From Selaginella moellendorffii (lineage: Eukaryota > Plantae > Lycopodiophyta): a stretch of DNA of 64,000 nt. The stretch is taken from positions 434,001 to 498,000 of the forward strand of contig NW_003314330.1 of NCBI RefSeq assembly GCF_000143415.4, in the 5' to 3' direction. The notes below the pieces were generated by a model, which saw only the letters and a list, made by a program, of their open reading frames with translations, was not told the origin of the DNA and did no database searches. How positions within the stretch are numbered: the first letter of the stretch is position 1; each line of letters begins with the position of its first letter. Of the stretch, positions 7,974-42,970 are shown one piece after another. A program made the position numbers and the translations under genes.

Positions 7974-10900
7974 GGTTTGTTGGTTTCTCCATTAGCACTT
8001 GGAATAGATTGTTGGATGAAGAAGGTGTGTAGTTGAGGTATTGACATCACTAGCACTTGTGTTAGTGGAAGTGGTATTGTTGTTCGAGTGATGAGGAATT
8101 TTTCTTAGAGCTTGATTTTCCATGTCATTTTTCTTTTAGTGTTTTAGCTTCACATTGGATCTTGAAGATGATTGAAGAAGAGTGTTAGTACAATGTAAAT
8201 ATCTGAAGATGTGGTCTTTGTGATCAAGTTTCAGATGTTTATTTTGCATTTTGCGGATGTTGATGTTAGATATCGGAAAAATGGGCAAAGATGTTCAAGG
8301 CTTAAGCATACTATGGGTTATGAAAATTAGTGTTGAAGTAAACCTATGTGAAATTGTAGGTAGGAGGAAGTTGGTTGAGTCTTGAAAGTTTGTATTCCTA
8401 GACTGAGAGTCATTCCTTCTCTAGGATAGAAGTTTTCCACAAATTTTCTTAGACTTTTCCAATGGTTGATTTGTTGATCACTTTGCTCGAAAACCATTCC
8501 GTTTTCATAAGCCAATACAAACTAGTGAAAAGGTTGGAGTTGACTTCGGTTGGCTTAGATAGTTTGTATGATGCGGCCCAAAAAGGATGCTAACTTTTGG
8601 GGCTAAGGCAATTGAGTTGAATAAAGTTTAGAGTTGGTGTAGAAAAGTGGCATTTGCACTTTTCTAAGAAGGGTGACCCTTGTGCCTTTCTTTTATAGTG
8701 TTATGCTTGGTGGCAAGTTGCATTTTGCATTTTGTTAAGACTCTATAAGAGTAGTGAACTCTCACTAATCTTGACTTAATCTTGGTGGCCCTACACCTTG
8801 GTTGAGGATAGTGATGTCCAACTTAGTTGTTTGAGTTTGAGATGTTAGTACTCGTACTATAACTTTGTCTATGAGGAGGTTATGTACTGATATGAGTCCA
8901 TTTCATAGTCTTCATTTTAGTTTCGACTGAGTGTTGATCATGCATAGCTAGCCTCTTCAAAGCATGCTTAGAGCTATTGACTAAATGCATTAGTGAGCTT
9001 AGTTGGATTTGAGTGGTCATTTAGTTTATGCATGTTCATGAACCTTTATCTCATGCCTGGGATATTATGTTCATGTTGGACAAGTGTATGACTCGATGAC
9101 ATGAGTTTAGTGTTTGGGTCCTGTAAAGGCAAGTTGAAGAGTGATTGTTGGTTGCTTTGTGACTAGTGATTGTTTGTAGACTTTGTCGAGGACTGTTGAC
9201 ACTTGCTTCACTTGATGAAGATTTATCAATGATGGGTTTGTTTTACCGAATGGTGTTGCGGAAGATCGTGTCGTAGCTTGCATCGTTTTTCCATGTTAGC
9301 ATATCGACTCTAGCTCTATCAATATCATTTAGTTGCATTTAGTTTGTAGTGTTGGATTTCATTGAGTTTTGGATGTGGTGAATCACTCTTTGATGACATG
9401 TTATCTGTAACTTAGTTTTGCTGAAGGATTGGTCTCGGATACTGAGTAAAGTATCTTCGACCTTGGTTAACTTGGTTGCTAGAGAGTTTTGAGTGGTGAT
9501 ACACTCGTGCTTTCTTCTAGCTTTGTTCTAGTGTTGATGGCATTGAAGTGAGGCCTTATCATTGACATTATTGTTCTTAAGATTCGAGTGAGATGAGATG
9601 TCTATCCTCAGGATTGATATTGAGTTTCATTAGTCTCAATAAAGATTGTGTTGATAATTTGGTTGTAGCTTTGTGTTGTTAACATTCGTGCATTTGCTAG
9701 TTAGCAACTGTATTGATGTTCAAATGAGCTAAGTGGCAAATTTGAGTTAGTTAAGTTCTCAACGAAATTATTTAGTAGAGGTTGAGCTTTAGCTTTTCCT
9801 TGAAAAGTGATTTGGTCATGGACTATGCTAGCTCTACAAGTAAAAGAGTTAGTGATCAATATTGAAATGTTTAAATCCTTATTGGATTTAAGTTGGAATA
9901 TATCAATCATGGATGATTCTTCTTGTGCTTGTTATTTAGTGAGTTATATTTTGTTATAGATGGATTTATGGAGAATTGTTTCATGGTCACTTGTCGAGCA
10001 TAGCTTCGTTATGTTTATCTTTTCGATTGATGCAAACATGCTCTTCATTAGTTTTGCATTATGAAGTATAACTTATGGATGCTTTGAGGAGGATATTGTG
10101 GGTTGTGTTATGATTTCTTCTTTGGCATTGAAGTTGGTTCATAAAAGATTCGTGATCATTATTAAGCAAAACTTGGCTATAGACGTCTTCAAACTTTTGG
10201 TTCTTTGAGTTTTCATGCTCATTATTCCATTTGTTAGAAGTTGCATTTTGGCTTATTAGTTTTAATATTGAAGTTGGCTTTTGCATCTAGCAATCGTTGG
10301 TGATGATTGATTATCATTTAGGATAGTTGATCTTCGTCAAAAGGTCTTGCTTGACTGTTGTTAATATAGAACGATTTGCTATTTTTTTGGGATGGTGGAT
10401 TTCTTCTTTGATGATGATTATGCATATCTCTTTTGATGGGATGATTGATGATTTTTCATGATGTTTTAATTATGCTATTTGATAGTTTATAGCTTGTTGC
10501 AATATTACATGTTCTTTATGGTTTATTCTGGATTAGTCTCTTGGGTTTGAGACATCAATAAGATGTTGCTAACACTTGCTTGAGCAACTCTAGTTCCTTG
10601 GTATGGTTGACCAGGATTTATTCAGATTAGCTGGTGCAATAGTTAGCATGAACAAGTGTTTGTTAGTCTTACCACATTCATTCTGTTCTATTGATTGTTG
10701 TTCGAGTTAGTTCTGATAAATTTGGATGTTATTTCCTTTGGGTGATACATTCACAAGCATTTTGCTTGCCAGTCAATGTTACCTTATGTTCTTTGAGTTA
10801 TCTTTCGTAAGTTGTTTGGCATACTATCTACAATCTTTAAAGTGTTCTTAATGATACATTAGCTATTGAATTTTGTTGGATGGCGAATCCTATGTTTCCA

Positions 10901-12289
10901 ACTATTGTGATCTTGGTGGTTCCTGTACTATACTACTGGTTTATCGGATGATAACTTAATTGGAATACTTTTGTATTCTAAATTAACAATTATTCATTGA
11001 TAATTACGTCTCTAAAATATCATTGTCTAAGACTTTGATATTGTCCATCTATTAATCTTTGAGTTTGGGCCAGTATAAGCAGATTGGCTTTGGCACTTCG
11101 TGTGCATGGTGAAATCTTTAATCATGGGGTAGCTACTGTCGACTGGTCACATAACCTGCTTCTTTGTCGATGTTCCTTATTTCGTTCAAAGGGCGTGACC
11201 GTGTAAACAACTCTAACTGCCTGTTTACAGTAGTCTATCTAAACCTTACCGATGGGTTTGGTTTCTTTGCTCATGAGGGTTGGGGCTTCTAGCTTCTGTC
11301 TCTATGTCCTTGCAAGCAGAGGCATATCACACTTTTGTAAGCTGGGTGACACCCAAAGCCGCAAGGGTGGCTGACTTCGTTGGTCATTTCCTTGTCAGTG
11401 ACAGCAAGAATGTGTCTGAGCTGGTAGCACATTCGTATTAGACAAAGAGGTTGCCTCTTACCTCATTTAAGTTGGTGCATTTCTCACATAGAATACTGTG
11501 AACTTTTTCTGGAGTTGTTTCCTTGGCGGTATTCTAAATTCGAGTATGCATCGACGAGGACATTGATCTTCCCTAGGGGGGGAGAGTGTCACGAATGTGA
11601 CTTTGGGTATCGAAATTTACCTATCGGCCAGTCCTTATGGACACTCTTTCCTTATTGCTACGATGGCAGGAGGTCGGTATTGCTAGACCCTTTATCAATC
11701 CCTCTTGTGCTAGTGGAGTTAACTGGGCATTTCAAGTATACTTAGACCGGACGAGCATAAGGACAAACTTCCTACGTGTTATTAGCTAAGCATATTTAGC
11801 CCGGTAAGGAGTTCCTGTCTCGTTATGTCTTACACTGGCTAGTGATAAAAACTCTCGTATATTGAGATTAATCCCTTAATATTGTTGGATGATAGCTTAT
11901 CGTGTTTACCAAACACCTTTGCTATCATGCCTTTTGTGTTAGTCTCGTTTCGGTCCCAAATGCTATTTATAGAAAGTGTCTAAATTTGCTCATTTGGCAT
12001 ATCTACAAAATGTAGAGATTGTCCTAAACACAATGGTGTTCGTCTCATGTCCAAATTCGCAATCTAACACCATTCCATATTTAGTAAGTTTTGACTATGT
12101 CCCAGAGACTAACTCCTGATACTAAGGGAGGTTTGGGGTGAAAGCCCAAAGCATGTGTTCCTCGAAAGGGGGGGGGGTTTCCAAATGTATAGTAGAGATA
12201 GTGGGTAGGTCGGGTATGGCCGACTAACCTAAGGCATAGTCTAGCTCCCGCTTGGGTGCCTATCTTTGTTCTATGTCTGGCTTGGGTTT

Positions 12290-13086
12290 TGTAAGCAACC
12301 AAAGGGAACAACTTGAGAGACGATCCATGGGGTTCAAATATAGAGGGAAAGGGCCCATGAATAAGAGTGCACCCCCTTTTCCTATCGGTTAAGGGTCTTG
12401 GGATAGTTAGAGTTAAGCGTCCTTGGGTTTGAATAGTACTGGGCTGGGTGACCTCCCGGGAAGTCCAAACTCAGGAGCTTACATTTGGTATCAGAGGGGT
12501 CTCGAGTTCGACTCTGTTGGTTGGCTAGGGGAATCACACCACATGTTGATTGACATCTGGCTGGTCCAGTTTGCTCCCGCGGGGAATCACACCACATGTT
12601 GATTGACATCTGGCTGGTCCAGTTTGCTCCCGCTGGGCTCGACCCAAGGGGTAGGGTGTCAAGAGAGCGAGGCTCTCGGGAGAGCTGCGGCTCTCAGCTT
12701 CCGTTCACGAGGGTGTGAACTTGCAAGGAAGCGTGGTGGATTGTAAGCAACCAAAGGGAACGACTTGAGAGACGATCCATGGGGTTCAAATATAGAGGGA
12801 AAGGGCCCATGAATAAGAGTGCACCCCCTTTTCCTATCGGTTAAGGGTCTTGGGATAGTCAAAGGGAACGATTTTCCTATCGGTTAAGGGTCTTGGGATA
12901 GTCAAAGGGAACGACTTGAGAGACGATCCATGGGGTTCAAATATAGAGGGAAAGGGCCCATGAATAAAAGTGCACCCCCTTTTCCTATCGGTTAAGGGTC
13001 TTGGGATAGTTGGAGTTAAGCGTCCTTGGGTTTGAATAGTACTGGGCTGGGTGACCTCCCAGGAAGTCCAAACTCAGGAGCTTACA
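12290..13086 (+). mobile_element. Cassandra-type TRIM (5S rRNA-derived LTRs)
   Basis: 5' LTR 12290-12483 (TGTAAGC...GCTTACA); PBS TGGTATCAGAG from 12486; ~260 bp non-coding interior; PPT before 12742; internally duplicated 3' LTR 12742-13086; TSD GGTTT at 12285-12289 and 13087-13091. Confidence 0.92.
12411..12466 (+). promoter_or_regulatory. 5S rRNA-like internal Pol III promoter (A-box, IE, C-box) in the TRIM LTR
   Basis: AGTTAAGCGT...TAGTACT...GGGTGACCTCCCGGGAAGTCC matches the plant 5S rRNA internal control region; second copy at 13014-13069. Confidence 0.88.
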
Positions 13087-13529
13087 GGTTTAAGCCCAAG
13101 TTCCATTCCATGCTAACTGGTGGAGTACCCATATCCTCACATTAGACCACTGGTATGCCGAAATAGCACCAAACTCCATTTGGCTTCGTTTTGCATGCTG
13201 GTCCTGGCATTGAGATGCTGATTGCTCTAGGACTATTCCAAGTTGCTCTGGGCTCTTGTCCCTTTGCTCCTTGGGCTATATGCTCGAAAGTTGCTCCGTG
13301 ATCCATTTCTATCACTCCTTGGCTCCATGTTTGGGAGTTTGGCACCGTTCCTTTGTTCAGTGGCCCAAGGCCTTGAACCTTGAGTTCTACACCACTGTCA
13401 TTTGGACACATGGCATATGACACGTGGCATGTGTCATGTGGCATAAAGAGGGTTTAGGTTCTGCTTCGTGGTGTTATCCTATGGTAAATCACCATAGGAT
13501 AAAGGGTAAAAACCACGTGCGCTACAATT

Positions 13530-15155
13530 GACTAGGTATATTTATGCTCTCTTGCATCCAACACACCTCCAAGATGATTTTTAGAAGCGTCCATTTGCAA
13601 GATGAAAGATCAAGTACAATCAAGATACACCAAAATTAAAGGAGTTGTCAACACCTTTTTAAAATCTGTAAATGCCCACTCACAATTCTCAGATCAACTG
13701 AAAAATGATATAGACAACCTCAGCAACACTCGTAATAATGCAGTATGATAAAAAAAATGAGCATTAAAATGACCAAGATATTGCTCATTGCCGAAGAAGT
13801 GTTACACCATTATTCACATACTTTTGAATAAAGAATTTTTAAACAACCACAAATTTGTTAAGATCAACTTGCAAACCTTCAAGAGAAATTTGACACCCAA
13901 ATTATATTTTTAAACCAATATATGCACTTTGATCACTTTAGCTTAAACAAACTTCTCACAATTAATTCAACACTTTATGAACATTATGAACATGCTCTTC
14001 TCACATCCTTTTAGAGTGGATTAGAATATCATTGCTGAAGTTAGCATATTGCAAAGAACCTCATTCATCATTTGTTGAAAAGTTAAAAGCATTGTTTACA
14101 TCATCAAAAACTCGTACAGACAAAATGATGTATTATAAATAGTCTTGGGAATATCCTCCTTGGCTATTGACACTTTCTAGTACTCAAATTCAATTCCAAT
14201 TTGGTGAATTAACAATTTCACCCTAAACGATCTAAAAGCTTATTAGAGTGGGGAAAAATGTACATATTTGAGATTGTTATATCTTTAAATGGATAATAAT
14301 TGATGTAGAAGCGAATAATTCCATTAGGCTTTATCACAAAATGAAGTTAACATACCCAAGGACTTCGAGATTTCCATATAAGACTTTTCTTAACATTATT
14401 TAAACATTTGCTCATAAAATTCTATTCTTCTTTAGCGATTGATGCCAAATAGAAATTTTGATTGGACTAGCATCCCTAGTTGGTATAGAATGATGCATTG
14501 CAATCTTTGTTTCAGATGACAAGTCAAAGTTAAAGAGATAAGTATATTGCTACCATAATATAAAGATTGTATAAAGGATCTAGAGAAGGAATAAAAGAAC
14601 AAAAAGGAAACACAATAAAAATAATAGAGAGATAAAAGTGATAAAGCAAAAAGTGGAACAAAAGTGAAAGGAATAGAAAAAATATAAAAGAATATAAAAT
14701 AAAAAGGAAAATCACATTTAACATGATTGTGCTACAATTAATCTATACGGTCAAAAGTTTAATTTAGCACCACATGCAATAATTGGAGCTCAAGTTCAAA
14801 CCAGAAACAAACACTAAATTACATAATTAACTCAAACATCCCTTGATAGAAATGATGCATTTTCTAGAATGTATTGTTACAATTATCAGTATATCAATGT
14901 TTGGGATCTAAATAATACAAAGTTAAATTTTAAAAAAAAGCACAAATCAATGTATTCTTCAAAGATAATATAAATTGTCTCTCACTTTCATCTATATGAG
15001 TGTATGGAATTTAAAAATGGAATAAAGAAATGTGTAGCCCAAAAACTCTACTTTATATACAAGAGTGAGTGGTCCGGATTAAAATAAATATGAGGTCTAT
15101 TAAAATCCTACTATGTTATTATTAATATATTGCATCATAGCTATATATTTTGATC
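13530..15155 (-). mobile_element. Decayed Ty3/gypsy copy (LTR, leader and RT; gag/PR deleted), same family as 61564-64000
   Basis: Reverse complement of ~14985-15150 aligns to the LTR at 61575-61750 (atccggaccactc, gtttttgggcta); ~14100-14530 aligns to the RT region at 63530-63950. Confidence 0.7.
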
Positions 15156-15722
15156 CGAAAATATAGAATTAATAATTTTTTTTATGGATGAGAATGTCAG
15201 GAAGGCAATCTAATCATAAAATTGCCTTAGAAACTGAGAAACTAAAAAATAACAGAAAAAGCTTTAATTAATGGAGCACATAGATTAGTAAGAGTTTTTA
15301 ACACATGCAAAGTATAGTAAACACAAGAAGTATTTGAGTAAATAGCTAAGCATGTGACACTTTTTGGTTTTAGGAACATAAATTTAACACCATATTCTTT
15401 TGTTCTGTAGTAAAATTCTTCTTCTTACATAATCCATCAAAAAAATAATATAAGGTTTTTATTTGCCCATTAGAAATTTTAGAGTAATCATAAAATACTA
15501 TCTTTCTTTAATAACATTCATTTTATAGTGTTTATGGATTCAACTTTTATAGTGTCCATTGATTTGATAATTAATAAGCTTCAGTCCTTGGCCTCAAATA
15601 AGCTAATCATCCTCCATATTACTAGACTTGAGGAACACGTGTTTATTGATGTATTTAGCAAATTCTAGATGAGCCTTATATTATATTAGCAATTTAGGTG
15701 TGGTTAAAAATATTAAGGTTGG

Positions 15723-15917
15723 TATAAGCAACCAAAGAAAACAATTGAAAAATGATCCATAAAGGTTTAAATATTAAAAAAAGAAAGGCCCATAAATAAA
15801 AATGTATATATTTTTCCAATCAGTTAAAAGTTTTGGGATATTTGGGATTAAATGTTTTTAGGTTTGAGTACTACTATGTTAGGTGACCTCCCTAGAAATC
15901 TAAATATCAAGAAACCT
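15723..15917 (+). mobile_element. Old, AT-drifted Cassandra solo LTR
   Basis: Colinear with 12290-12483 (taagcaaccaaag, aaggcccat, ggtgacctccc) with many C>T/G>A changes. Confidence 0.7.
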
Positions 15918-16340
15918 TTTAAGCAACTCTGAATTCATAAACTATTAAATGCTACTTATAAATACTATTGAATATTATCCATAAATAATGCTAACCTAGG
16001 TAGTGGTCCAACACCACTATGAGCTTCAATTACAAAAGAAGATTGTAAGCATTAATTGCAAAATGAAGTGAGCAGGACTAATAAAATATCCAGGATCTTT
16101 TAGACAAAGAAATAAGGAAAGTTTGTAAGTTATCACCATGATTAATCATATTATTAAAAATTGAAAAAAAATTATGAAATATGACAAACCATAATTTATG
16201 TGGAGTAATATAATTAAAACATAAGCTAAAAGTTTTAAAAGTAATAAGGAAAGATTGAAATGAATCATAAATTTAATTTTAAACTTTTTAATAATCATTC
16301 TATATGAAAGTAAATTTTTAAGCTTAATTAGAAATAATTT

Positions 16341-16628
16341 ACTATGTGTTGCATGTAGCAATGCTTGGTTTGCTTAATAATAATGTTATTCCTACGTATT
16401 AATCCAATTGATCAAATAAAGCTTATAATTATAAGCATGTTTATAATTTATAAACACAAGATTAATCTTATTGCATATCAACTATTAGATGGTAGAATAA
16501 AAAAGAATATACTAAAAAGGGTTTAAGAAATTTTATAAATTATAAATACAAGAAATGAAGAATATCTAAGCATATTTTAGGTATATTCACTACCATCCCC
16601 TTATAGGTTTGTTTAAGCAAACCAAAAA
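16341..16628 (-). mobile_element. Short non-autonomous Helentron/Helitron2-like element, copy 1
   Basis: 13-bp asymmetric subterminal inverted repeats TTGGTTTGCTTAA / TTAAGCAAACCAA with a hairpin outside one of them; homologous to 43867-44204. Confidence 0.55.
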
Positions 16629-16765
16629 TAAAGGGATTATTAAAACAATTACCTTTTATAAAAACAAGCTATAAAATAATTTTAGTTTCATATTTATCAT
16701 AGAATTATATTTTATAATATAGGCAATTAATAATTAACTTTTTCGCCTTATGTTTGCTTTGTGTA

Positions 16766-18535
16766 TCATCGGGCTTGGATGGGAGAGGTTGGCAAGTTAA
16801 CAGAGAATCCTCTGGGTAAAGTGGTGGTCTCTAGCTCCGCAAGAGTTTCCAGCTGCTTTACCACCTGTCCCATGGACGGTCTCAACCAAGGTTCCTCTTG
16901 TGTACACGACACAGCAATCTCCAGAATTTTCTGGCATTCCACCTCCACAAAACTGGGATCGCTCCTCAGCCTTGGATCGATCAGGCTGTTGTGGCAATCG
17001 GCTTGGATCTCAACATCCTCCACTCCAGCCAGGTAATTGGTTTCTTCCTCACCGCCCTCGATTGCCTGATCTAGCTCTTCCATTCTCCTCCGGCAGCAAA
17101 CCAGCTCGATCAACACCACACCATAGCTGTAGACGTCTGTCTTGTCTGTGATCGTGGAATGGAGCCACTCGGGCGCCATGTAGCCCTGAGTTCCTCGCAT
17201 CACCGTGATCGTTTGGCTCTTGTCCTTGTCGACAATCTTGGCGAATCCAAAATCGGAAATCTTGGCACGCATCTTTCCATCCAAAAGAATGTTCTGAGGC
17301 TTGATATCCAGATGGAAGATCTTCTCGCGGCATGAATCGTGGAGATAGGCCAGCCCGCGAGCGACATCCATGGCGATCGAGACCCTGCTGCTCCAATCCA
17401 AGTACCTCCCCTTGCCAAAAATCCACGAATCCAGCGACCCGTTTGGCATGAATTCGTACACCAGGAAGTGGAGCGGGCTCTTGATGCAAAACCCCAGCAG
17501 CCTCACGAGATTCAAGTGGTGAATCCTCCCCACGGCCATCACCTCCGCCCGGAATTGCTTGCCAGAGCCCCCGATCCGCTTGACAGCCACCAATCTCCCA
17601 TCCGGAAGAACACCCTTGAAGACAGACCCCGATCCGCCCTGTCCCAGCTTCGATCCCACGCCGAAATCCCCAGTCGCGGCACAGAGCTTCCGATGCCTGA
17701 ATCGCTCCGGCAGCATTCCCCCGAGCTCGCTCTCCTTCTCGCAATCCCTAGCCCGGGACCGCGCTGCCCGCCACGCGAAAACCCCAAGAACAAACCCTAG
17801 AACAATCCCAGCCGTCGCTGCCGCCACGGAGGACGCGATCGCAACCGTCCGTTTCAAACGCGGCCTCTTTCCCGCGCGCTCAAACTCCCATGTTATATCG
17901 ATGATCCCTTCCGAGATTTTGTATCCCAGGGCCTCCCAAACGCCCTGCGTGGCGCCCAGGCTCTTTGGAGAGCACGGTGGATAGAAGCTAGTGGCTGCCG
18001 TACAGCCAGCCATGGCCGTGCACTCATCCACAACCATGGCCGTCACGGTACGGCCGTTGAGGGCCGTGATGGTTACGTTTCTACCGCAAGCGCCTCCTGG
18101 CCGTTGATAGTTATACCATCCGGTGGCCATGGATGCCACGAGATCGGACGGCTGGTATTTCTTCTCCTCGCACCTCGAGCCATTATCGAGCTCGATGTAG
18201 TAGAGAATGGCGGGGTTGGGGCGGCGGCGCGACACTGGCGGCGAGCAATCGTAGAGATAGTATGTGGTGTTTGTGGCGCAGTGATCTTCGTCGATGGTAG
18301 GAGCGGTGTAGACGAATGATTGGGCGGGATTGCAGCCCGGGGCGACTGGGCAAACGGAGATGTGGGTGTTGGAGGGATCGCTGTTGCATTGGCCGTAGGG
18401 ATCGCAGATCATCATGGCCGGGCAGTCGTTGACGCTCGCGCAGGGCTTGCCGCAGGCGCTGCTCGTGGATTGGGGATTCCCGGCCGCGAAGAACAGCGTG
18501 ATCGTGGCGAGAAGAACTGGGATAGAATTGGGCAT
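16766..18535 (-). CDS. Kissper-Kiwellin ectodomain receptor-like Ser/Thr kinase (non-RD), 589 aa, intronless
   Basis: Signal peptide; Kissper motif CGKPC..NDC..IC..CNSDP..TH..C; kiwellin core YDCSPPV / ATGWYN / TVTAMVVDEC / PPC / VWEALG / DITW; TM helix; kinase GQGGSG, VAVK, HLDIKPQN, DFG, APE. Confidence 0.93.
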   Translation of the reverse strand: MPNSIPVLLATITLFFAAGNPQSTSSACGKPCASVNDCPAMMICDPYGQCNSDPSNTHISVCPVAPGCNPAQSFVYTAPTIDEDHCATNTTYYLYDCSPPVSRRRPNPAILYYIELDNGSRCEEKKYQPSDLVASMATGWYNYQRPGGACGRNVTITALNGRTVTAMVVDECTAMAGCTAATSFYPPCSPKSLGATQGVWEALGYKISEGIIDITWEFERAGKRPRLKRTVAIASSVAAATAGIVLGFVLGVFAWRAARSRARDCEKESELGGMLPERFRHRKLCAATGDFGVGSKLGQGGSGSVFKGVLPDGRLVAVKRIGGSGKQFRAEVMAVGRIHHLNLVRLLGFCIKSPLHFLVYEFMPNGSLDSWIFGKGRYLDWSSRVSIAMDVARGLAYLHDSCREKIFHLDIKPQNILLDGKMRAKISDFGFAKIVDKDKSQTITVMRGTQGYMAPEWLHSTITDKTDVYSYGVVLIELVCCRRRMEELDQAIEGGEEETNYLAGVEDVEIQADCHNSLIDPRLRSDPSFVEVECQKILEIAVSCTQEEPWLRPSMGQVVKQLETLAELETTTLPRGFSVNLPTSPIQAR

Positions 18536-18775
18536 TGTAGAGTTGGAGAGATTTGCGGAAAAAGCGATCGATCTCCTGACAACCTGGGGGACTGGTTCTT
18601 AAAGATCGCGGTGGTTTAGTCAGACTTTGCGAGCATCTTCTCGCCGCGAAAGTCTAGAGTTGAATTTGACATTGGGATCGATCGATCGCCAGAGATTTAG
18701 TTCGTGTTGGAGTATGCTCTGGGTAGAAACGTTCCAATCGATTACAAACTCTCCCCCTCTTGCGGGTTTTTAAAA

Positions 18776-20668
18776 ATGCTACTAGTAATGTTGTTTGCCT
18801 TAGTGGTTCCTCATACATTAGGGCAAACGATCCAGGGCAAGGATGAGGAGAAATGCGCCTTGGCGCCTCGCTGCACGAAGCCAGGTCAGTGCTCCAATGG
18901 CTCGGCCTGCTACCCCGATACGATGCGCTCCGGCAACCGATCGCTTCGCGCTGGATCTTGCCTCGACGATTCATCCGCCGGCGCTTGTAACATCTGCGCC
19001 CCCAGCTCCACTCTGATCTACAATGGCACGCAGATGTGCCCCGAGTGCTGCGTTCCCGGCCTGGCCTATCGCTTCTATGCGTGCTCGCCGCCACTCCAGA
19101 TCGTCAACCGGGCCGTGCTCTACTCCACGACTTTTAACGAGAATCTGTCCTGCACGGATCAAATCTTTTCCATCCAGGATCAAGTGGTATCGCTCTCTTC
19201 CGGATGGATCCAGCGCAACTTCAGCATTTGCCTCACCAATATCAACATCACTGCACCAAACAATCGCAGCGTCGTGGCCAAGATCGTGGACGAGTGCTCG
19301 TCCAAAGCTGGATGCACTGCCGGCACTGCGTACTGGGAGCCGTGTGCTCCCAACGCCATCGCTGGAACTCCCGGGGTGTGGAGCGCTCTTGGATACGATC
19401 CAGGGGATGGAATTCTCAGGGATGTAAGCTGGAGCAAAACGAATGCGTCAGTGAGTGCCTCTGGAGGAGGAGGAGGAGGAGGATCCAAGAAGAAAAACAC
19501 TGGGGCTATCGCTGCAAGTGCTGTGGTGGGATTCGTGCTCTTTGCAATGGTTCCAGTGGGATTTTATTGGATCAAGATCAAGGCGAGGTTGGCTCTCAGA
19601 AGAAGGAACCAAGAACAGGTTGAGGAGATCAGTACGCTAGTTGGTCTTCCCAAGCAATTCAGCTACCATTGCTTACAGAAGGCCACAAGGAACTTTGCGA
19701 AAAAGTCGATGCTTGGAGAGGGAGGATTTGGCATGGTTTTCAAAGGCAACCTTTCAGATGGAACGACAGTGGCTGTGAAGAGAATGGACGTGGAGATTGA
19801 GGGATCCAACGAAGGGCAGCAGCAGTTCAAAGCGGAAGTTTTGTCAATCGGAAGCATCCGTCACTACAACCTCGTCCAGTTGAGAGGCTTTTGCATACAC
19901 GGGCCTTCTTCTCTGCTGGTTTACGAGTACATGAGCAACGGTGCTCTGGACAAATGGATCTTTCCAAAGGACTCGCGGTTTCTAGATTGGAGCCAGAGGC
20001 ACCAAGTTGCGGTGGACGTTGCTAGAGGCCTGGCATATCTTCACGAAGGCTGTAGAGAACAGGTGCTTCACTTGGATATCAAGCCGCAGAACATCTTGCT
20101 GGACGAGAACCTGAGAGCGAGGATCGCAGACTTTGGCCTCTCGAAGCTCGCGGAGAGGGGGAAGAGCTACGCAGTGACGGCCATGAGAGGCACGCCGGGA
20201 TACATGGCTCCAGAGTGGCTCCACACAAAGGTGACGGACAGGACCGACGTTTACAGCTTTGGGATCGTGCTGCTGGAGCTGCTAAGCTCGCGGAAGAGCT
20301 TGGAGATCCAGAAGCACTCCTCGAGCGTGGCTTCCACCTCGGGGGCTTCATCGTCGGCCTCATCGCAAGGGGTCTTCATTCTCGGTCACACCGCGGCGAG
20401 GCTCTTCCACAGTGGAGATGTGGCGACGCTGGTGGACAGGGACCTGGAAGTGGACCTGAGCGTCGCGGAGAGATTTGCGAAGATCGGGCTATGGTGCATT
20501 CAAGAGGATCCCGCGAAGAGACCGTCCATCGGAAACGCTCTTGCCATGCTCGAAGGCGACTTGGAGGTGGGAGACTTGCCTCCTCCTCCTCCAAGCGGCG
20601 CAAACTCGCCGGTTTTGAGAACTCCGGGCATGGATTCGTGGAGTAGCTCGCTACAAACTGGCACCTGA
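18776..20668 (+). CDS. Second Kiwellin-ectodomain receptor-like kinase (non-RD), 630 aa from the first ATG, intronless
   Basis: Signal peptide MLLVMLFALVVPH; Cys-rich Kissper-like start; YACSPP / SLSSGW / VVAKIVDEC / VWSALG / DVSW; TM helix; kinase GEGGFG, VAVK, HLDIKPQN, DFG, APE. The track's start at 18704 is a non-ATG codon. Confidence 0.93.
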   Translation: MLLVMLFALVVPHTLGQTIQGKDEEKCALAPRCTKPGQCSNGSACYPDTMRSGNRSLRAGSCLDDSSAGACNICAPSSTLIYNGTQMCPECCVPGLAYRFYACSPPLQIVNRAVLYSTTFNENLSCTDQIFSIQDQVVSLSSGWIQRNFSICLTNINITAPNNRSVVAKIVDECSSKAGCTAGTAYWEPCAPNAIAGTPGVWSALGYDPGDGILRDVSWSKTNASVSASGGGGGGGSKKKNTGAIAASAVVGFVLFAMVPVGFYWIKIKARLALRRRNQEQVEEISTLVGLPKQFSYHCLQKATRNFAKKSMLGEGGFGMVFKGNLSDGTTVAVKRMDVEIEGSNEGQQQFKAEVLSIGSIRHYNLVQLRGFCIHGPSSLLVYEYMSNGALDKWIFPKDSRFLDWSQRHQVAVDVARGLAYLHEGCREQVLHLDIKPQNILLDENLRARIADFGLSKLAERGKSYAVTAMRGTPGYMAPEWLHTKVTDRTDVYSFGIVLLELLSSRKSLEIQKHSSSVASTSGASSSASSQGVFILGHTAARLFHSGDVATLVDRDLEVDLSVAERFAKIGLWCIQEDPAKRPSIGNALAMLEGDLEVGDLPPPPPSGANSPVLRTPGMDSWSSSLQTGT

Positions 20669-20854
20669 TCATCGTTTCTTTTATCAGGTAATAGATTAAA
20701 CTTTCTCTATAGTTTTCTATTATTTGTTTTTAATTTTCTTTTCTTTTTCTTTCTCTCTTTGTAGCAGGCGATTTGCTTTCGCCTGTGCCGCAAATGGTTA
20801 GACAATTATGTACATAAAATCTCTCTCGCCTAAAATTTTTTGCTTCGATCTCGT

Positions 20855-23800
20855 CTAGAAGTTTTCTTTGTGAAACTCAAACCTGCAGCTTGATTGCTGT
20901 GTGTATTCCTGTGAAAGTGTGCGTAGCTCTTTTGCTAGGAGCGCCGGCCCGCAGTAAAAAACACCTGCGAATATCAAAAAGTTATATGGAAAGTGAAAAC
21001 CAATTTGACTGACCAATTGTGGAGTTAGCATGCGTCGTTGAAAGGTTTGAGAAAACTTTGCTCCAGTTTGGACGAGCAAAATGTGTGCGTACCTGGAAGT
21101 TTATATACGATTGATATTATTACTCAGAAAAACCATAAGAAAATACCCAGAATTCATACCCGAGTTCCAGAAACAATGTCAACTCCGTTTTTTGCATGGT
21201 GCAAAGCTTGAACCATTGCAATGAGAGCAGACCTCGCGTCACCCTCCTCATAAACACTCGTGAGATAGTTGTGCATCTCAATCACGGCCTGATAAACAAA
21301 AGATTGATAATCCAAACTTTGGAGGAACATAGAGAGGTTTTACCTTGTGATCGATTTCCGCAACTTCATTCATGACACCTTTAAACCACTCGAACGATCC
21401 CTGCTCCCGCGTCACCCAGTAGAAATACGCGTTTGTGGGACACTTCCGCTTGCGTCTACGTGGGCTTTCGAGCGAGTGTCTCCTGGGGCTCTCCAGCGCT
21501 AGTGCTCCGTTGGGAGATCCAAATGACTTGCTCATATCAATCGAGAATGATAAATCCTGCAAGCACAATCGATCGAGCCTAGCCTTTGTTACTCACGAGA
21601 GATCGTTTGAAGAGGCTTGAGCGCACTTACTTGGAGCTGGTCGGCCATCTTGCGCTGGTTGAGCATGTCTTTGAGAATGCTGATAAAAGGAGTGGCACCG
21701 ATTCCCAGTCCAATGAGGAGAAGAACATCGTACTTTCTATAGTCTTGCGAAGGACCTCCATACGGGCCGTCAATCACCAGCTTTGGGAATTTGCCTCGCG
21801 AGGTTGGGATCTCTTCCGTGGTTCGTTCCTCCCTTAGCAATCTGCTCTTGTTGTCTGTGGATGGCTCGCAAACCTTTGTAACAAGAATAAAATGATCAAA
21901 TAAGAACGTTAGCAAACCATATGATTGGAAACAAATTGTACCTCAGAGAAGAGCTTTCTCATCTTTTGCGTCCAGTCGCCCAAAGTTCTGATGTGAACGC
22001 TCAGGAAATCCTCTCCTGGAGCGGAGGTTATGGAGAAGGGATGCCTGTGGAAAAAAATATAAGCTCCAAAGGCAAGAACCATAATTTGCATCATACCATT
22101 CGAAGGGCGAGACTTCAGCGCACTTGAGGAAGAGATACATTCCACTGTGGTAAGTGAATCCAGGAGGCTTGCTCATGTGTAAAGCTAGCACATTTCCGGG
22201 GTATATCGCAGCCTTTTCGACTATCATAAGAAAAAGCCCAAATCTTTCCAAAAACCTTGCTTACCTTGATGATTTGTACAGTGTAATTGGCCCTGCAAGC
22301 TCGATACACTCGCTCTCCAGCATACAGCAGTAGGGGCACAGCCAAATACATCCATGTCTGCAATTCAAAATTCTGCTTTGAAAAAGATAAAAAGGAGTTT
22401 TGTCTTACATTTTTTTCGTGCCACTTGTAAGTAAGGAAGAGGAAGAAGGAATGGACGAGGAGGAGGATGTAAACGACGATGAGGAGGTGATGCGAGTACC
22501 AAAACGCATTGAAACCGGTCATGTTCTTGAGAGGCCAGGGAAGTTTGATGAGATCTCTCCGGAACCATCTCGACGCGAGAGTGAAGGCGATGACCATCAA
22601 TACTACCATCATAATTCCCGTCACCCCTTCCACCGATCGAAGAATGTCCACATAAGTTGGTTTCTTGTTGTGGAATCCTTTCCCGATCATCCTTACAAAC
22701 TCCTGGTCAGGATAGTTGACAATCCTAACGAAATCGCAAGCCAGGTGAGTTCCTGCGTGGATGAAAACCCCCACAACAATCCCTAGAGCAATGATCTGCA
22801 AAGTATACAAAAACGTTGATGGCCAAGTTGGTATACAACTTTCTCGAAGGTGATCTTACCTTGTGGAAGTTGATATCATCGTCAAAAGGAACAAGATTCC
22901 CGAGCCAAGTCGATCGAAGCCAGGTGATCGTCTTCCTGCAAACCGGGAAGAGGATCAAAGCCATGTTGAGCTTGAGCGTCTCGGCAGCACCCTTGGCGGT
23001 GCAAACGCAGTAGCCCATGACTTGGAACGCCGCCTTGTTCTTGTACTGCACAAACTTCCAGCTGAAGAGCCCGGCCATGGCCATAATCCACAGCGACACC
23101 ACCCACATTCGCCTCCAGTTATCACCCAAAGAATGCCGCGAGTTCCTCAGGAATCTCTGCAATCGGCGTGAGATGCCTGGTGCTTTCGTGCTCGTGATGA
23201 TCTGGCTCGCCTGCTGGCTGCTGTGATCCTTGGGGTGTGGTCCTCGCATCAGCAGCGTCTCTAGTTGCCATAGCTGCAAACCATGCAATGCAAACCAAAA
23301 GCACCAAAAAGGTGGTGTCAGAAAAAACGTTGAGATACTTGTGACGGATTGGAACACTTTAGATTCCCATCCGAAGCTTCTTCTTTGCTTTCTTTTCTGT
23401 TCCCACGTCTAAATCTTCATTTCCTACCTCGATGTAGCCCAGGTTTTCCGGATCCAGTTCTTCCATGATGAGCGCGGCATATTCCTCGGCCTGCTCCTTG
23501 AGTTTCGACAGCCGGTTGGCGGACGCACTCAGCATTATCACCTGCCACCATTGCAAGTGTTCAGCAATTCTCTTCTGGATATGCTTCTTCCTCTCACAAA
23601 CAGAAAAAGAGGAGAAAGAAACAAAATCTGGAAACTTTTTGAAGTTTCAAAAGGTTTGTAAAAATGCATACCTCTTTCACCTCCCTCTCTGAAATCCGTC
23701 CATCGAGGTTCTTGTCACACCTATGAGGCGGCGGATCAGCTGCTAATTACATGATTACGAGCGGGGCTGACTTACATGTCGAAGAAGATCTGCATCCTCG

Positions 23801-24639
23801 CATCGAAGCTCTGATCAGAGATTTGCAACCAGAAATCGTACATGTCCCTCTTCGACAGCTTCCTGAGCTGCTTGAGCCCTCGCCTCCGTGCCAGAGCATC
23901 GAAGAGCTCCGCGGCAAATTCGTTGGAATCCTCCATTCCTGTCGATCAGAGGCCAAGCAGATCAGTGGTGTTCCTTCGAGCGATCAAAACCAAACGGTAG
24001 GAAAGTGTTGCTTGGATCTTTTCTCATGGCTAAAGGAGAGAGAGAGAGAAAGAGAAAGATCTTGGAAAGGGAAACACTACCAATGCACAGCCCAAAATCC
24101 GATTTGTCGATGAAGCCCTCTTCGCTGGCGAGCTTGTCGAATCGCCGTGACACCAATTCCCACGCCAGCTTCTGGTTGTTGCTCTTGCTGATGAATCGCA
24201 GCCCCTGCAATGCGTGCTCGGCCCCCGATTTGGATCTCGCCAGCCTGCGGATGTCCGCGCCACGGCTGCTCGGCGCCACCACCTCCTGATCCTTGGCCTT
24301 CTTCCCCGACCGCGACGACAATTGCCGGACATGGCTCCACACATCTCCTGTGAATTTGCTGAGCTTGGCGGACGCGCTCTTGATCAGCGCTGCCGTCGCC
24401 TGTGGCGATGCCCTCTTGGAATTGGAATTGGATCGCGTGTCGAGCAGCAGAGTATTGCCGTGAGGATCAGCCGCTTGGGCGCTCTGCGCTGGAACCGGTG
24501 CGATGCTGCGGAGGGTCACTGAATCCTTCCTCACATCCAGCGTCAGCTCCACGAGTTGGTGATACTCGCCCTCTTTCGGCTGATTGAAATCGTTGATCTG
24601 GAGCTGGATTGGGGGCAGAGACACCTGGTGGTAGTCCAT
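20855..24639 (-). CDS. RBOH: Respiratory burst oxidase homolog (NADPH oxidase), multi-exon
   Basis: Exon translations: [17 protein letters not shown]; EF-hands ([26 protein letters not shown]); [16 protein letters not shown]; [11 protein letters not shown]; HPFSITSAP; IDGPYG; [12 protein letters not shown]; [15 protein letters not shown]; GVFYCG; FEFHKENF*. Confidence 0.96.
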
Positions 24640-26988
24640 CTTTTTTGCCTTTCTTTTCTCTCCCCCACGAGGAGAGATTGATCGAATTCGTCTCTCGAGG
24701 GATAGAGAGACCACCGCGCTCTTTCCTTATTTAATTCGTGGGCGTGGACTCGGCCTCCTCGAAAAAAAAATGGTGGCAAAAGATTCTTCCTATATTTCTT
24801 TGGGAAATCAAACTCGAGATGATCATCGATCACAAACTCCAGCAAAAATTCCTAGCTCTAGACACGAAAACCTTTGCTCTCCTTGCCACAGTTGTTCCAA
24901 AGACTACACTCGAGAGCTACAGCCATGATAGCATTCTCGGAAACCAAAGTGGCCCTACTTTACTAGAATGTTAAAAAAGATGGGATTTTTCTCGCTTCAC
25001 CCCCTTGCTTTAAACTTGAAAGAGTTTTTGCTTGTCCATGTCTCTCATTCTTCTTTCCTTTTTCTTCTTCTTCTTCTTCGTTGTTTGTTTATCTTTTCCT
25101 CAAATTATTTGTAGATTGTGAGTTTACACCACTGTCAAAAAAGAATTCACCTCTTTCAGGTTCCTTGTGGATTTTTGTCTTGTAACTGGTAACTCGGGCA
25201 AAAACATGACGTGGGGGTAAGAATTTCCAAAAGGCATGACGTGGGGTAAATTCCAGCACACCAGCAGTTACACAAGTTCACACTGCCAAAAGCAATTCGA
25301 AAGCAGTGATTTTTATCTGGTCCCAAGAAAAGATCAGAGAGAGAGAGCAACTCCTTCGCTTGGATTTCCATGATTTCATCCCGTCAACATTTCTGTAGTT
25401 TGCATTACGCGGTTTGACAACGTAGTCCTCCCCACAGATGAATTTCATCTCATCTTCTCGAAGAACAAAGACAAAACTAGGCATCGTCGCCATCTCCGTA
25501 TTATATGTTTTCCTTGTTGCCAAGTCCGGCATCTTGTGTACTTGTGTGTAGCTTTTCGCGCAATGCATTTCAATTGCAAGAAGCTCTCCAGGAGATCTCT
25601 ACGAATTCTTAATGTCTTTTCTGTCTGGAAACATGATACACCCACCCATACACCACATACATTTGTTTAGCGCCTGCAGAACTTTATTCTAACAAATGCC
25701 GTGTCACGTCTTCCGCTGCTATGTGATCTTACAAATCTGACCATTTGCTCGTTTCGCTGTTCTAGAAAGCCTGGCCTATGTCTAGCATAGCCGGCAACAA
25801 AATTTCAATCCGAAAAGCCTAAAGTACTGAATGACTGTTTTGACCAATTTATATCAAATTGTTCCGTTTGTGCTTGAGAGTCAACTGCTGATCAAGGGAC
25901 GACGAGAAAGAAAGAGAAGCAAAGAAATGAAATAAAAAAGAGAAGAGAAGCTTCTGAAAGTTTGAAGGCCTAGACATTACGCAAGTTTGTTTGTGTGTCA
26001 TGTTCCTCGAAGATTGACATTGAGATCGAATTAGGGAGCCACAGCTCTATGGCAGTTGTGAAGTTCCAGATTGATTGAGATATCCAAGGCATGGCTATCT
26101 GTTCTTCCTCGTCTATCTCCCTCTCTCCTCTTTTCGCTCTTTGTGCATGGAGACATTCAAAGGTGGATGATTGCGATGCATCAGAAGTTTTCTATGAAAC
26201 ATGCCCCACTAGAGACAGCGAAACAAGAACAGAAGGTAATACAAACGTACAAGTACTTCAGACTGTAGAACATTCAGAAGGACGGGAAAAGAAAGAGGGT
26301 TTTCATCGCTAAGTTCAGAAACTTGATAGAGAGGAACGCCTCATTGTGTCGTTCTTTGGGTGGTACAGGTGATCCAACCTTTGTCTCTTTGCAGTGGATG
26401 ACTTGCCCTTCAAAGGGATATTTGCCTATGAGAGCAGCAAAGGTAAGCACACTCCAAAAGACAGTTAGTGTGTTTTTGTGGGTCAATGCTGTGATTTCAG
26501 CAACAAGCATGGCCAAAGGTGTCAAAGGCCATCGGGTCATGTAAGTTGGTGTCACCGGTGAGGACCATACCTTCCAGTCAAGCATAGTCAAACCCCACAT
26601 TTCAAGCTACAAGCTTTGGTTTTGTTTTGTCTATCACAAAAATATTCACACAAAATATGTATAGTTACATGGTAGATTGCACTTTGCCTCCTTTCTTCCA
26701 GTGATTGAACCATTTGGACACGGAAATGGGGCCTCCAGCTCTGAACAAGGAAAAACAAAAACCCAAATGTAATTCAGCAATTATCAAAAGGTCTAGGATC
26801 TGGGGATCTTTCTTTGTTAATATACAGACAGAAAATGGAGAAAAGAAGAGAGAAAACAAAAAAACGAGACAAGATGATCTAGTCTGTGGCTATAAAACAC
26901 AAAAAGCAGTCGAGCAAATTGCAAACGACGCATGGACACCATTCAGCCTGAAAAGTTAGACGCTAAAGAAGAGAGATTTGGTCACACA

Positions 26989-42893: not shown

Positions 42894-42970
42894 TGTAAAC
42901 TCATAAATTTAGATATTTTAGAGATTTCACCCAACCTAATACTCTAAAACTTTTAACCGATTAAAAAATG
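42894..42970 (-). mobile_element. Degenerate Cassandra LTR fragment
   Basis: Reverse complement resembles atcggttaa...gtact..gggtga...agcttaca of the TRIM LTR. Confidence 0.45.

What the first reader, a model, noticed from the sequence alone, without database searches (positions are those of the whole stretch)
16766..20668. Head-to-head pair of Kissper-Kiwellin receptor kinases: a soluble effector-binding defence protein used as a receptor ectodomain
Seen: two divergent intronless ORFs with ATGs 240 bp apart. Each encodes signal peptide, Cys-rich Kissper-like module, full kiwellin barwin/double-psi barrel, TM helix and an intact kinase. Known: kiwellins are usually small secreted proteins, and maize KWL1 binds and inhibits the Ustilago effector Cmu1. 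Inference: these could be surface receptors with an integrated kiwellin bait, and the shared short promoter recalls paired sensor/helper immune genes. I cannot confirm whether this fusion has already been catalogued.
Basis: partly seen in the sequence, partly recalled or inferred. Interest (0 to 1): 0.92.

Follow-up and report, generated by a model that had tools for sequence, protein, structure and literature searches.

The report
Paired kiwellin-ectodomain receptor kinases in Selaginella
Two back-to-back spikemoss genes encode membrane receptor kinases whose outer part is a kiwellin, normally a small secreted defence protein. The same two-gene unit recurs at three places in the genome, so the genes probably work as a pair, but nothing about what they sense has been tested.

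Summary
The window is Selaginella moellendorffii scaffold GL377634.1:434001-498000. Gene A (16766-18535, minus strand, 589 aa) and gene B (18776-20668, plus strand, 630 aa) are uninterrupted ORFs with start codons 240 bp apart. Each encodes a signal peptide, a Cys-rich N-terminal module, a kiwellin barrel, one TM helix and a catalytically complete non-RD kinase of the SD2-5 (SD-2b) type.

- **Domain evidence:** Pfam KWL1 E 4e-21 (A) and 1.5e-23 (B). The AlphaFold model of A's ectodomain matches kiwifruit and maize kiwellin crystal structures (TM 0.83-0.85).
- **Conserved pair:** the same A-type/B-type head-to-head unit sits at two other paralogous loci, with spacers of 222 and 264 bp. A-types and B-types form separate clades, so the pair was duplicated as a unit.
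- **Selection:** dN/dS is 0.2-0.47, which indicates purifying selection.
- **Haplotype difference:** on the second haplotype, B carries a 2-bp frameshift.
- **Eudicot relatives:** a kissper-less kiwellin-RLK clade exists in eudicots (saguaro, Cuscuta), as single genes.

I found no paper describing this receptor class. RefSeq calls these genes SD2-5-like or At5g20050-like, with models that lack the signal peptide. Ligand, pairing and expression are untested here. This scan already reported the same family on other pieces of this genome (s1-374804, s1-380479). PR5K is the closest precedent.

The parts
16766..18535 (-). Gene A (A-type kiwellin-ectodomain RLK), intronless CDS, 589 aa
   Evidence: ORF. 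KWL1 E 4.1e-21 and Pkinase E 1.3e-44. The haplotype-2 allele is intact at 593 aa. Allelic dN/dS is 0.27.
18467..18535 (-). A: predicted signal peptide (about residues 1-23)
   Evidence: N-terminal hydrophobic stretch IPVLLATITLFFAA read from the sequence. No SignalP was run. The RefSeq and GenBank models start at residue 41 and omit it.
18338..18460 (-). A: kissper-like six-Cys module (about residues 26-66)
   Evidence: Aligned to kiwellin 4PMK residues 2-40 and to kissper-kiwellins of Cryptomeria, Oldenlandia and Lycium.
17885..18286 (-). A: kiwellin double-psi beta-barrel (residues 84-217)
   Evidence: Pfam KWL1 covers residues 84-217. The AF2 model matches 4pmk/6fpg at target TM 0.83-0.85.
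17774..17839 (-). A: transmembrane helix (about residues 233-254), followed by a basic stretch (WRAARSRAR)
   Evidence: Kyte-Doolittle 19-mer score 2.15 at residue 236.
16850..17659 (-). A: non-RD Ser/Thr kinase domain (residues 293-562)
   Evidence: Pkinase covers 293-561. Motifs GQGGSG, VAVK, HLDIKPQN, DFG and APE are present. Long terminal branch of 0.88 in the kinase tree.
18536..18775 (.). 240-bp divergent intergenic spacer; candidate bidirectional promoter
   Evidence: Sequence. About 96% identical between haplotypes. Paralogous pairs have spacers of 222 and 264 bp that are only weakly alignable. Promoter activity was not tested.
18776..20668 (+). Gene B (B-type kiwellin-ectodomain RLK), intronless CDS, 630 aa
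   Evidence: ORF. KWL1 E 1.5e-23 and Pkinase E 2.4e-47. 41% identical to A over 539 aa.
18776..18826 (+). B: predicted signal peptide (about residues 1-17)
   Evidence: Hydrophobic 19-mer at residue 1, KD 1.81. The RefSeq-type model starts at Met50 and omits it.
18854..19027 (+). B: Cys-rich N-terminal module (about residues 27-84), a divergent kissper-like region with an 11-residue insert
   Evidence: Alignment to kissper-kiwellins. Only partly alignable to kiwellin, from chain residue 21. The haplotype-2 2-bp deletion corresponds to window 18981-18982, codon 69.
19028..19438 (+). B: kiwellin double-psi beta-barrel (residues 85-221)
   Evidence: Pfam KWL1 covers 85-221. Maize KWL1-b 6ti2 E 6.7e-25.
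19508..19576 (+). B: transmembrane helix (about residues 245-267), followed by a basic stretch
   Evidence: Kyte-Doolittle 19-mer score 2.29 at residue 245.
19697..20545 (+). B: non-RD Ser/Thr kinase domain (residues 308-590)
   Evidence: Pkinase covers 308-590. Motifs GEGGFG, VAVK, HLDIKPQN, DFG and APE are present.

Best explanation
SHOWN: A and B are type-I membrane receptor-like kinases. Each has a signal peptide, a Cys-rich (kissper-type) module, a kiwellin double-psi beta-barrel, one TM helix, and a catalytically complete non-RD kinase of the SD2-5 (RLK-Pelle SD-2b) lineage. They are the two members (A-type and B-type, about 41% identical) of an old inverted-duplicate unit. That unit was later copied whole at least twice in Selaginella moellendorffii, and all three units keep a start-to-start spacer of 222-264 bp. 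Both domains evolve under purifying selection, and the ectodomain evolves faster than the kinase. INFERRED: the pair is transcribed divergently from the short shared spacer. The two proteins act together at the plasma membrane, probably as a heteromer presenting two different kiwellin surfaces, to bind an extracellular ligand. That ligand is most likely a secreted microbial protein or another infection-associated molecule. The signal would be relayed by phosphorylation, as with other non-RD pattern-recognition receptor kinases, possibly through an RD co-receptor. Family turnover looks like birth-and-death evolution of the kind often seen in immune receptor families: a frameshifted B allele, a decayed partner-less A copy, and partial B copies.
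For: Architecture. Organism and locus. Recurrence of the head-to-head unit: GL377627 (639-aa B-type, minus strand; 598-aa A-type, plus strand; 222-bp gap) and GL377594 (612-aa A-type, minus strand; 644-aa B-type, plus strand; 264-bp gap). Kinase tree: all Selaginella members form one clade (100/100); B-types form a clade (100/99); the two other A-types form a clade (99/98), with win_A joining weakly. Ectodomain tree: A-types including win_A form a clade (100/96), and the topologies are congruent. dN/dS: A alleles 0.27; Sm627 vs Sm594 A 0.33 (ectodomain 0.47, cytoplasmic 0.25) and B 0.26 (0.40, 0.18); window pair vs the others has dS above 1.4, so the arrangement is old. Non-RD motif HLD in all members. 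Turnover: 2-bp frameshift in the haplotype-2 B allele; a 95-97% identical segmental copy on GL377666 lacks B and carries a decayed A; B-type fragments lie next to the GL377627/GL377719 pair. Established knowledge, cited from memory and not re-read here: kiwellins bind a fungal effector (maize KWL1-Cmu1, PDB 6fpg, which is a hit); non-RD kinases are enriched among pattern-recognition receptors (Dardick and Ronald 2006).
Against: No transcript evidence was obtained for either gene. The exact full-length products are not on record in any assembly, and the 90% clusters hold only genome-derived models. There is no evidence of physical or regulatory interaction. The spacers of the three pairs share little sequence. 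Three units is a small sample, and whole-unit retention could come from segmental duplication alone. Both partners are non-RD and both carry the full ectodomain, so there is no obvious division of labour. B is frameshifted on the other haplotype, so it may be dispensable. The eudicot relatives are single genes, so the fold-plus-kinase design does not need a partner. No ligand is known for any kiwellin outside maize KWL1/KWL1-b.
Confidence: 0.55

Rival explanations
1. A and B are independent paralogous receptors. The head-to-head layout is just the footprint of one old inverted tandem duplication, carried along by later segmental duplications in a compact genome. They share no regulation and do not form a heteromer.
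For: The spacer sequences of the three pairs barely align. Eudicot kiwellin-RLKs function, or at least persist, as single genes. B is frameshifted on haplotype 2 while A stays intact. Both proteins have complete ectodomains and kinases.
Against: All three old units (dS above 1.4 between the window unit and the others) keep one A-type and one B-type gene, and keep the spacer within 222-264 bp. The only partner-less A copy is decayed.
Confidence: 0.3
2. The kiwellin ectodomain senses a plant-derived or cell-wall-derived molecule rather than a microbial protein. This would be wall-integrity or developmental signalling, as with WAKs or CrRLK1Ls.
For: The fold belongs to the double-psi beta-barrel group. 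After the kiwellins, the model's next structural matches are loosenin and expansins, which bind polysaccharides. Ectodomain dN/dS of 0.4-0.47 shows no overall positive selection.
Against: The only biochemically defined kiwellin activity is binding a fungal effector (6fpg and 6ti2 are top hits). The non-RD kinase type and the gene birth-and-death pattern fit immune receptors better.
Confidence: 0.25
3. One reading: the kiwellin is an integrated bait that mimics soluble kiwellins targeted or bound by pathogen effectors, with one gene acting as sensor and the other as helper.
For: Kiwellin-effector binding is known (6fpg). The head-to-head pairing is conserved. A's kinase has a much longer branch than B's, 0.88 vs 0.34.
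Against: Both partners carry the supposed bait, and both kinases are complete and non-RD. No effector is known for Selaginella. There is no evidence that soluble kiwellins are effector targets rather than inhibitors.
Confidence: 0.15
4. The genes are not functional: unexpressed relics or an annotation artefact.
For: No transcript evidence was found. There is a frameshifted B allele and decayed copies elsewhere.
Against: Both are uninterrupted ORFs of 589 and 630 codons with every catalytic residue, every structural Cys and the TM helix intact. dN/dS is well below 1 between alleles and paralogues in both domains.
Confidence: 0.04

Closest known systems
PR5K / thaumatin-domain receptor kinases (Arabidopsis PR5K; Populus and Salix thaumatin-plus-kinase proteins P0318 and P0316)
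   Same: A soluble pathogenesis-related protein fold serves as the ectodomain of a single-pass non-RD RLK. The poplar and willow thaumatin-RLK kinases carry the same HLDIKPQN motif and fall next to the SD2-5 kinases in the tree.
   Different: The ectodomain is a kiwellin double-psi barrel rather than thaumatin. The Selaginella genes come as conserved A/B head-to-head pairs.
SD2-5 / RLK-Pelle SD-2b G-type lectin receptor kinases
   Same: The kinase domain is of this lineage. The best non-family hits are SD2-5-like proteins, and the catalytic-loop and activation-segment motifs are identical. RefSeq names the alleles SD2-5 or At5g20050-like.
   Different: There is no B_lectin, S-locus glycoprotein or PAN domain. 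The whole ectodomain is replaced by kiwellin.
Soluble kiwellins (kiwifruit Act d 5 / kissper-kiwellin, 4PMK; maize KWL1 and KWL1-b, 6FPG and 6TI2)
   Same: Same domain by sequence and fold, including the kissper-type N-terminal module in A-types.
   Different: Kiwellins are 20-28 kDa secreted proteins. Here the domain is anchored by a TM helix to a kinase. Identity is only 30-37% and the 'VVDECDS..GCD' motif is altered.
Eudicot kiwellin-RLKs: Carnegiea gigantea ORF L008:10001-11779, Cuscuta campestris P0192, and unnamed P0185, P0193, P0200 and P0036
   Same: Same domain order (SP, KWL1, TM, SD2-5-type non-RD kinase).
   Different: No kissper module. They are single genes, not pairs. Their ectodomain nests among eudicot kiwellins, and their kinase sits among seed-plant SD2-5 kinases rather than next to the Selaginella clade. 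A single origin is not statistically rejected (AU p 0.13 and 0.19).
Head-to-head NLR sensor/helper pairs (RGA4/RGA5, RRS1/RPS4)
   Same: Divergently transcribed immune-type receptor genes with a short shared spacer, kept as a unit.
   Different: A different protein class, at the cell surface rather than intracellular. Both partners carry the extra domain. No functional dependence has been shown.

Membership tests
Kiwellin domain (Pfam PF24300 KWL1) | Sequence match above the Pfam gathering score (27 bits) | tested here: met
   A scores 75.9 bits and B 83.9 bits. The paralogues score 71.6-81.1 bits.
Kiwellin domain (Pfam PF24300 KWL1) | Double-psi beta-barrel fold superposable on solved kiwellins | tested here: met
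   AF2 model of A's ectodomain vs 4pmk/4x9u/6fpg/6ti2: E 4e-17 to 5e-15, target TM 0.76-0.85, rmsd 2.1-3.3 A. B was not modelled.
Kiwellin protein family in the strict sense (Klemm et al. 2022, PMC9813671) | Small secreted stand-alone protein | tested here: not met
   The domain is followed by a TM helix and a kinase in one ORF.
Kissper-kiwellin subgroup | N-terminal six-Cys kissper module of about 39 residues | tested here: inconclusive
   Met for A, which aligns to 4PMK from residue 2 with six Cys in register. B aligns only from kiwellin residue 21 and carries an 11-residue insert.
Plant receptor-like kinase (RLK/Pelle), type-I topology | Signal peptide, ectodomain, single TM helix, cytoplasmic Ser/Thr kinase with catalytic residues | tested here: met
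   Hydropathy, sequons and motifs; Pkinase; invariant K, E, D, N, DFG and APE. The signal peptide was judged by eye and hydropathy only.
RLK-Pelle SD-2b (SD2-5 type) | Kinase domain groups with SD2-5 kinases | tested here: met
   The best non-family hits are SD2-5-like. The catalytic-loop motif is identical. The Selaginella clade attaches within the SD2-5 set, though deep branches are weakly supported.
RLK-Pelle SD-2b (SD2-5 type) | G-type lectin (B_lectin) / S-domain ectodomain | tested here: not met
   No PF01453, PF00954 or PF08276 hit in A or B.
Non-RD kinases (class enriched in pattern-recognition receptors) | The residue before the catalytic Asp is not Arg | tested here: met
   HLDIKPQN in A, B and all paralogues.
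Paired sensor/helper immune receptors | Head-to-head arrangement conserved among paralogous or orthologous loci | tested here: met
   Three loci with spacers of 240, 222 and 264 bp and congruent A and B clades.
Paired sensor/helper immune receptors | Asymmetry: the integrated domain is in the sensor only and signalling competence is in the helper | tested here: not met
   Both partners have the kiwellin ectodomain and a complete kinase.
Paired sensor/helper immune receptors | Genetic or physical interdependence of the partners | not testable with these tools
   Needs co-IP and knock-outs.

The most novel reading that the evidence does not exclude
A-type and B-type kiwellin-RLKs form an obligate heteromeric cell-surface receptor. 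Their two divergent kiwellin ectodomains would capture secreted microbial effectors that normally bind soluble kiwellins. This would be a plasma-membrane counterpart of integrated-domain NLR pairs, it would be old in vascular plants, and it would have been re-invented in eudicots.
Probability: 0.12. Interest if true: 0.9.

Novelty: new variant of a known kind. Interest (0 to 1): 0.62.

Why it matters
Kiwellins are widespread plant defence proteins, but only one molecular activity is known for them: inhibiting a smut-fungus effector. Finding the fold wired to a kinase suggests that kiwellins are general extracellular ligand-binding modules. This happened in Selaginella and, probably separately, in eudicots. 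It also gives a receptor read-out (chimeric receptor ROS or MAPK assays) for finding their ligands.

The conserved A/B head-to-head unit is a directly testable candidate for a genomically paired cell-surface receptor system. That arrangement is well known for intracellular NLRs but, to my knowledge, little documented for RLKs.

There is a practical point too. Current gene models truncate the signal peptide, split the genes into 'partial' kiwellin-like and kinase-like fragments, or (in saguaro) splice the RLK to a neighbouring kiwellin. Kiwellin and RLK family surveys built on those models may therefore misclassify these genes.

Tried and rejected
- **Transcript evidence:** exact look-ups of the full-length A and B products in public assemblies, including Logan, found nothing. 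The 90% clusters contain only genome-derived models. Expression is therefore untested, not refuted.
- **Conserved promoter elements:** the three spacers align poorly. The sigma-70 promoter and terminator scan does not apply to a plant.
- **Single versus double origin of the fusion:** the best trees separate the Selaginella and eudicot clades for both domains. AU tests do not reject one clade (p 0.13 for the kinase, 0.19 for the ectodomain), so I do not claim independence as shown.
- **HLDIKPQN as a shared derived mark of kiwellin-RLKs:** rejected.
- **All Selaginella 'kiwellins' being RLK fragments:** at least eight JGI 'partial' models are such fragments. An earlier scan note mentions a stand-alone kissper-less kiwellin array elsewhere in the genome, so I dropped the general claim.
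- **Word-indexed search with A's ectodomain:** it found only A itself. That was a sensitivity limit, overcome by the profile search.
- **Full-length profile search:** it was swamped by tandem-kinase proteins and served only to pick outgroups.


Full report
**What is there**

The window is Selaginella moellendorffii assembly GCA_000143415.2, scaffold GL377634.1. Window coordinate plus 434000 gives the scaffold coordinate (derived).

Two long ORFs sit head to head. Gene A is 16766-18535 on the minus strand (589 aa). Gene B is 18776-20668 on the plus strand (630 aa from its first ATG). The two start codons are 240 bp apart. Neither ORF is interrupted, so ectodomain and kinase are joined without any splicing.

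**Domain content**

- Pfam finds KWL1 (PF24300) in both: A residues 84-217 at E 4.1e-21, and B residues 85-221 at E 1.5e-23. It also finds Pkinase at 1.3e-44 and 2.4e-47.
- A residues 26-217 align to kiwifruit kiwellin 4PMK residues 2-187 at E 4e-28. The alignment runs through the kissper peptide with six Cys in register.
- B matches maize KWL1-b (6TI2) at 6.7e-25, but aligns to kiwifruit kiwellin only from residue 21. Its N-terminal Cys-rich module carries an 11-residue insert. It is therefore a more divergent kissper-type module.
- An AlphaFold2 model of A's ectodomain (30-row alignment, pLDDT 78, pTM 0.69) has the nine kiwellin chains as its best PDB matches. These include KWL1 in complex with the Ustilago effector Cmu1. 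Scores are E 4e-17 to 5e-15, target TM 0.76-0.85 and rmsd 2.1-3.3 A for eight of the nine chains (the top full-length hit, 4x9u_A, has target TM 0.68 and rmsd 13 A). Loosenin and expansins follow at E around 1e-6.
- Each protein has an N-terminal hydrophobic leader and one strong TM segment followed by a basic stretch. A has 3 N-glycosylation sequons and B has 8, and the ectodomains hold 14-16 Cys.
- Each has a complete set of catalytic kinase residues.
- The catalytic loop reads HLD, so both are non-RD kinases.
- A and B are 41% identical over 539 residues.

**Gene models in the databases**

The public models are poor.

- The GenBank and RefSeq-type models on this scaffold start at internal Met41 (A, 549 aa) and Met50 (B, 581 aa). 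They therefore lack the signal peptide.
- The original JGI annotation split each gene into 'partial' hypothetical proteins, for example SELMODRAFT_37754, 100893, 17510 and 100881.
- RefSeq names the second-haplotype alleles 'probable receptor-like protein kinase At5g20050' (XP_024534878.1) and 'G-type lectin S-receptor-like kinase SD2-5' (XP_024534925.1).

**The pair is a conserved unit**

I searched a profile of the two ectodomains against 1.84 billion cluster representatives. It gave 331 hits at E <= 1e-3. Among the best 150, the long ones that also carry Pkinase were all from Selaginella, plus one metagenome contig. Fetching their loci showed the same arrangement twice more.

| Scaffold | A-type | B-type | Start-to-start spacer |
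|---|---|---|---|
| GL377634 (this window) | 589 aa, minus | 630 aa, plus | 240 bp |
| GL377627 | 598 aa, plus | 639 aa, minus | 222 bp |
| GL377594 | 612 aa, minus | 644 aa, plus | 264 bp |

Each locus also has a second-haplotype copy.

- In the kinase tree, all Selaginella members form one clade (100/100). B-types form a clade (100/99). The two other A-types form a clade (99/98). Window A joins them weakly on a long branch of 0.88.
- In the ectodomain tree, A-types including window A form a clade (100/96).
- The branching order is the same for A and B: the window unit is outside the other two.
- So the A/B inverted duplicate came first and was then copied as a unit.
- Synonymous divergence between the window unit and the others is above 1.4, i.e. 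saturated. Between the other two units it is 0.34-0.46. The arrangement and the spacer length have therefore been kept for a long time.
- The spacer sequences themselves barely align.

**Selection and turnover**

Nei-Gojobori dN/dS values:

| Comparison | Whole gene | Ectodomain | Cytoplasmic part |
|---|---|---|---|
| A, window vs haplotype 2 | 0.27 | 0.42 | 0.21 |
| A-types, GL377627 vs GL377594 | 0.33 | 0.47 | 0.25 |
| B-types, GL377627 vs GL377594 | 0.26 | 0.40 | 0.18 |

Both domains are under purifying selection, and the ectodomain evolves about twice as fast as the kinase.

- On haplotype 2 (GL377589), A is intact at 593 aa.
- B on haplotype 2 has a 2-bp deletion corresponding to window 18981-18982 (codon 69, in the Cys-rich module). 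This shifts the frame, and the RefSeq model avoids the break by using an alternative start without a signal peptide.
- A 95-97% identical segmental copy of window 16723-23715 lies on GL377666. It lacks 18723-20754, which includes all of gene B. Its A copy has lost the TM segment and is frameshifted.
- Partial B-type copies sit next to the GL377627/GL377719 pair.
- This birth-and-death pattern is often seen in immune receptor families. That comparison is an inference from general knowledge.

**Relatives outside Selaginella**

The one non-Selaginella fusion (P0036) led to a eudicot clade.

- In saguaro cactus there is an intact 592-aa intronless ORF (L008:10001-11779; KWL1 E 2.5e-55, Pkinase E 1.9e-54). 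The GenBank model KAJ8448161 mis-splices it to a stand-alone kiwellin gene 4.4 kb downstream.
- Cuscuta campestris has P0192 (586 aa, with one intron in the kinase).
- Three unnamed proteins assembled from public sequencing runs (Logan) complete the set: P0185, P0193 and P0200.
- These eudicot proteins lack the kissper module and are single genes, not pairs.
- Their kinases form their own clade (100/100) among seed-plant SD2-5 kinases. Their ectodomains nest among eudicot kiwellins (94/91).
- This topology points to a separate fusion. AU tests do not reject a single clade (p 0.13 and 0.19), so independence is likely but not shown.
- The kinase motif HLDIKPQN is the general SD2-5 motif. Poplar and willow thaumatin-plus-kinase proteins share it.
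- So the SD2-5-type kinase module has been combined with at least three ectodomains: G-lectin, thaumatin and kiwellin.

**Literature**

Full-text searches found no description of such a receptor. I searched kiwellin with 'receptor-like kinase', 'kinase domain', 'ectodomain' and Selaginella. I also searched DPBB or barwin with RLK, and SD-2b with Selaginella.

The kiwellin family survey (PMC9813671) lists 61 larger proteins containing a kiwellin domain. [quoted passage not shown] Subscription journals are not covered by the library.

This scan reported the same family earlier on other pieces of this genome (s1-374804, s1-380479, and unchecked first-reader notes). I reached the pair-conservation and cactus results independently from my own searches. 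I add the Cuscuta member, the AU tests, the frameshifted allele and the decayed copy. Those earlier reports say the paralogues are expressed; I could not test that.

**How it most likely works**

- **Shown:** the protein architecture, the fold, the intact catalytic residues, the conserved A/B unit, and purifying selection.
- **Inferred:** divergent co-transcription from the spacer; joint action of A and B at the plasma membrane; binding of an extracellular ligand by the kiwellin domains; and phosphorylation-based signalling of the non-RD pattern-recognition type.
- **Weak points of the sensor/helper analogy:** both partners are complete, both are non-RD, and the eudicot relatives manage alone.
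- **Open alternatives:** the effector-bait idea stays a minority possibility, and a cell-wall or endogenous ligand is a live alternative.

**Verdict**

This is a real and well-defined feature. It is a new ectodomain variant of a known kind of protein (the RLK), analogous to PR5K, and it has an unusual and testable paired gene organisation. Its function is untested.

Noticed in passing
window 20855-24639 (minus strand): A respiratory-burst oxidase homologue gene (940 aa; NADPH_Ox, Ferric_reduct, FAD_binding_8, NAD_binding_6) lies tail-to-tail with gene B, 186 bp from its stop codon. The adjacency is kept on haplotype 2 and in the decayed copy on GL377666. RBOHs are substrates of immune receptor kinase signalling, so the neighbourhood may or may not be meaningful.
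   Followed up: partly
L005 (GL377594) 6642-7784 and 12254-12968: The paralogous pair on GL377594 is flanked directly by a class III peroxidase gene and a basic secretory protein (BSP) gene. Both belong to families I recall as defence-associated.
   Followed up: no
L009 (GL377666) 4487-9225: A 95-97% identical segmental duplicate of window 16723-23715. Gene B is deleted, the RBOH copy is truncated at its 5' end, and the gene A copy has lost its TM segment and is frameshifted (RefSeq XP_024519379.1, 305 aa).
   Followed up: yes
L008 (Carnegiea gigantea JAKOGI010000032.1) 10001-17198: GenBank model KAJ8448161 joins the start of an intact intronless kiwellin-RLK ORF (10001-11779) to a separate secreted kiwellin gene (16181-16789). 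The cactus RLK is therefore hidden in the annotation.
   Followed up: yes
P0015 (CAI5992497.1, Closterium sp. NIES-65): A 280-aa protein from a charophyte alga assembly has two kiwellin domains with very high Pfam KWL1 scores (287 bits, as high as angiosperm kiwellins). It is either contamination by plant DNA or a sign that kiwellins predate land plants.
   Followed up: partly
window 26665-28535 (minus strand, continues beyond): A gene for an SMP-LBD plus C2 domain protein (synaptotagmin-like tether) lies beyond the RBOH gene.
   Followed up: no
window 14001-16000, 42001-44000, 60001-62000: Blocks of very low G+C (0.24-0.27) against a background of 0.45-0.55. They may be repeats or transposon remnants. 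The first lies just downstream of gene A.
   Followed up: no
L003 (GL377719) 7088-8851 vs L004 (GL377627) 7859-9778: The two haplotypes of the second pair differ. On GL377719 the B-type ORF is shorter (587 vs 639 aa) and its start lies about 1150 bp from the A-type start instead of 222 bp, which suggests an insertion in the spacer.
   Followed up: no
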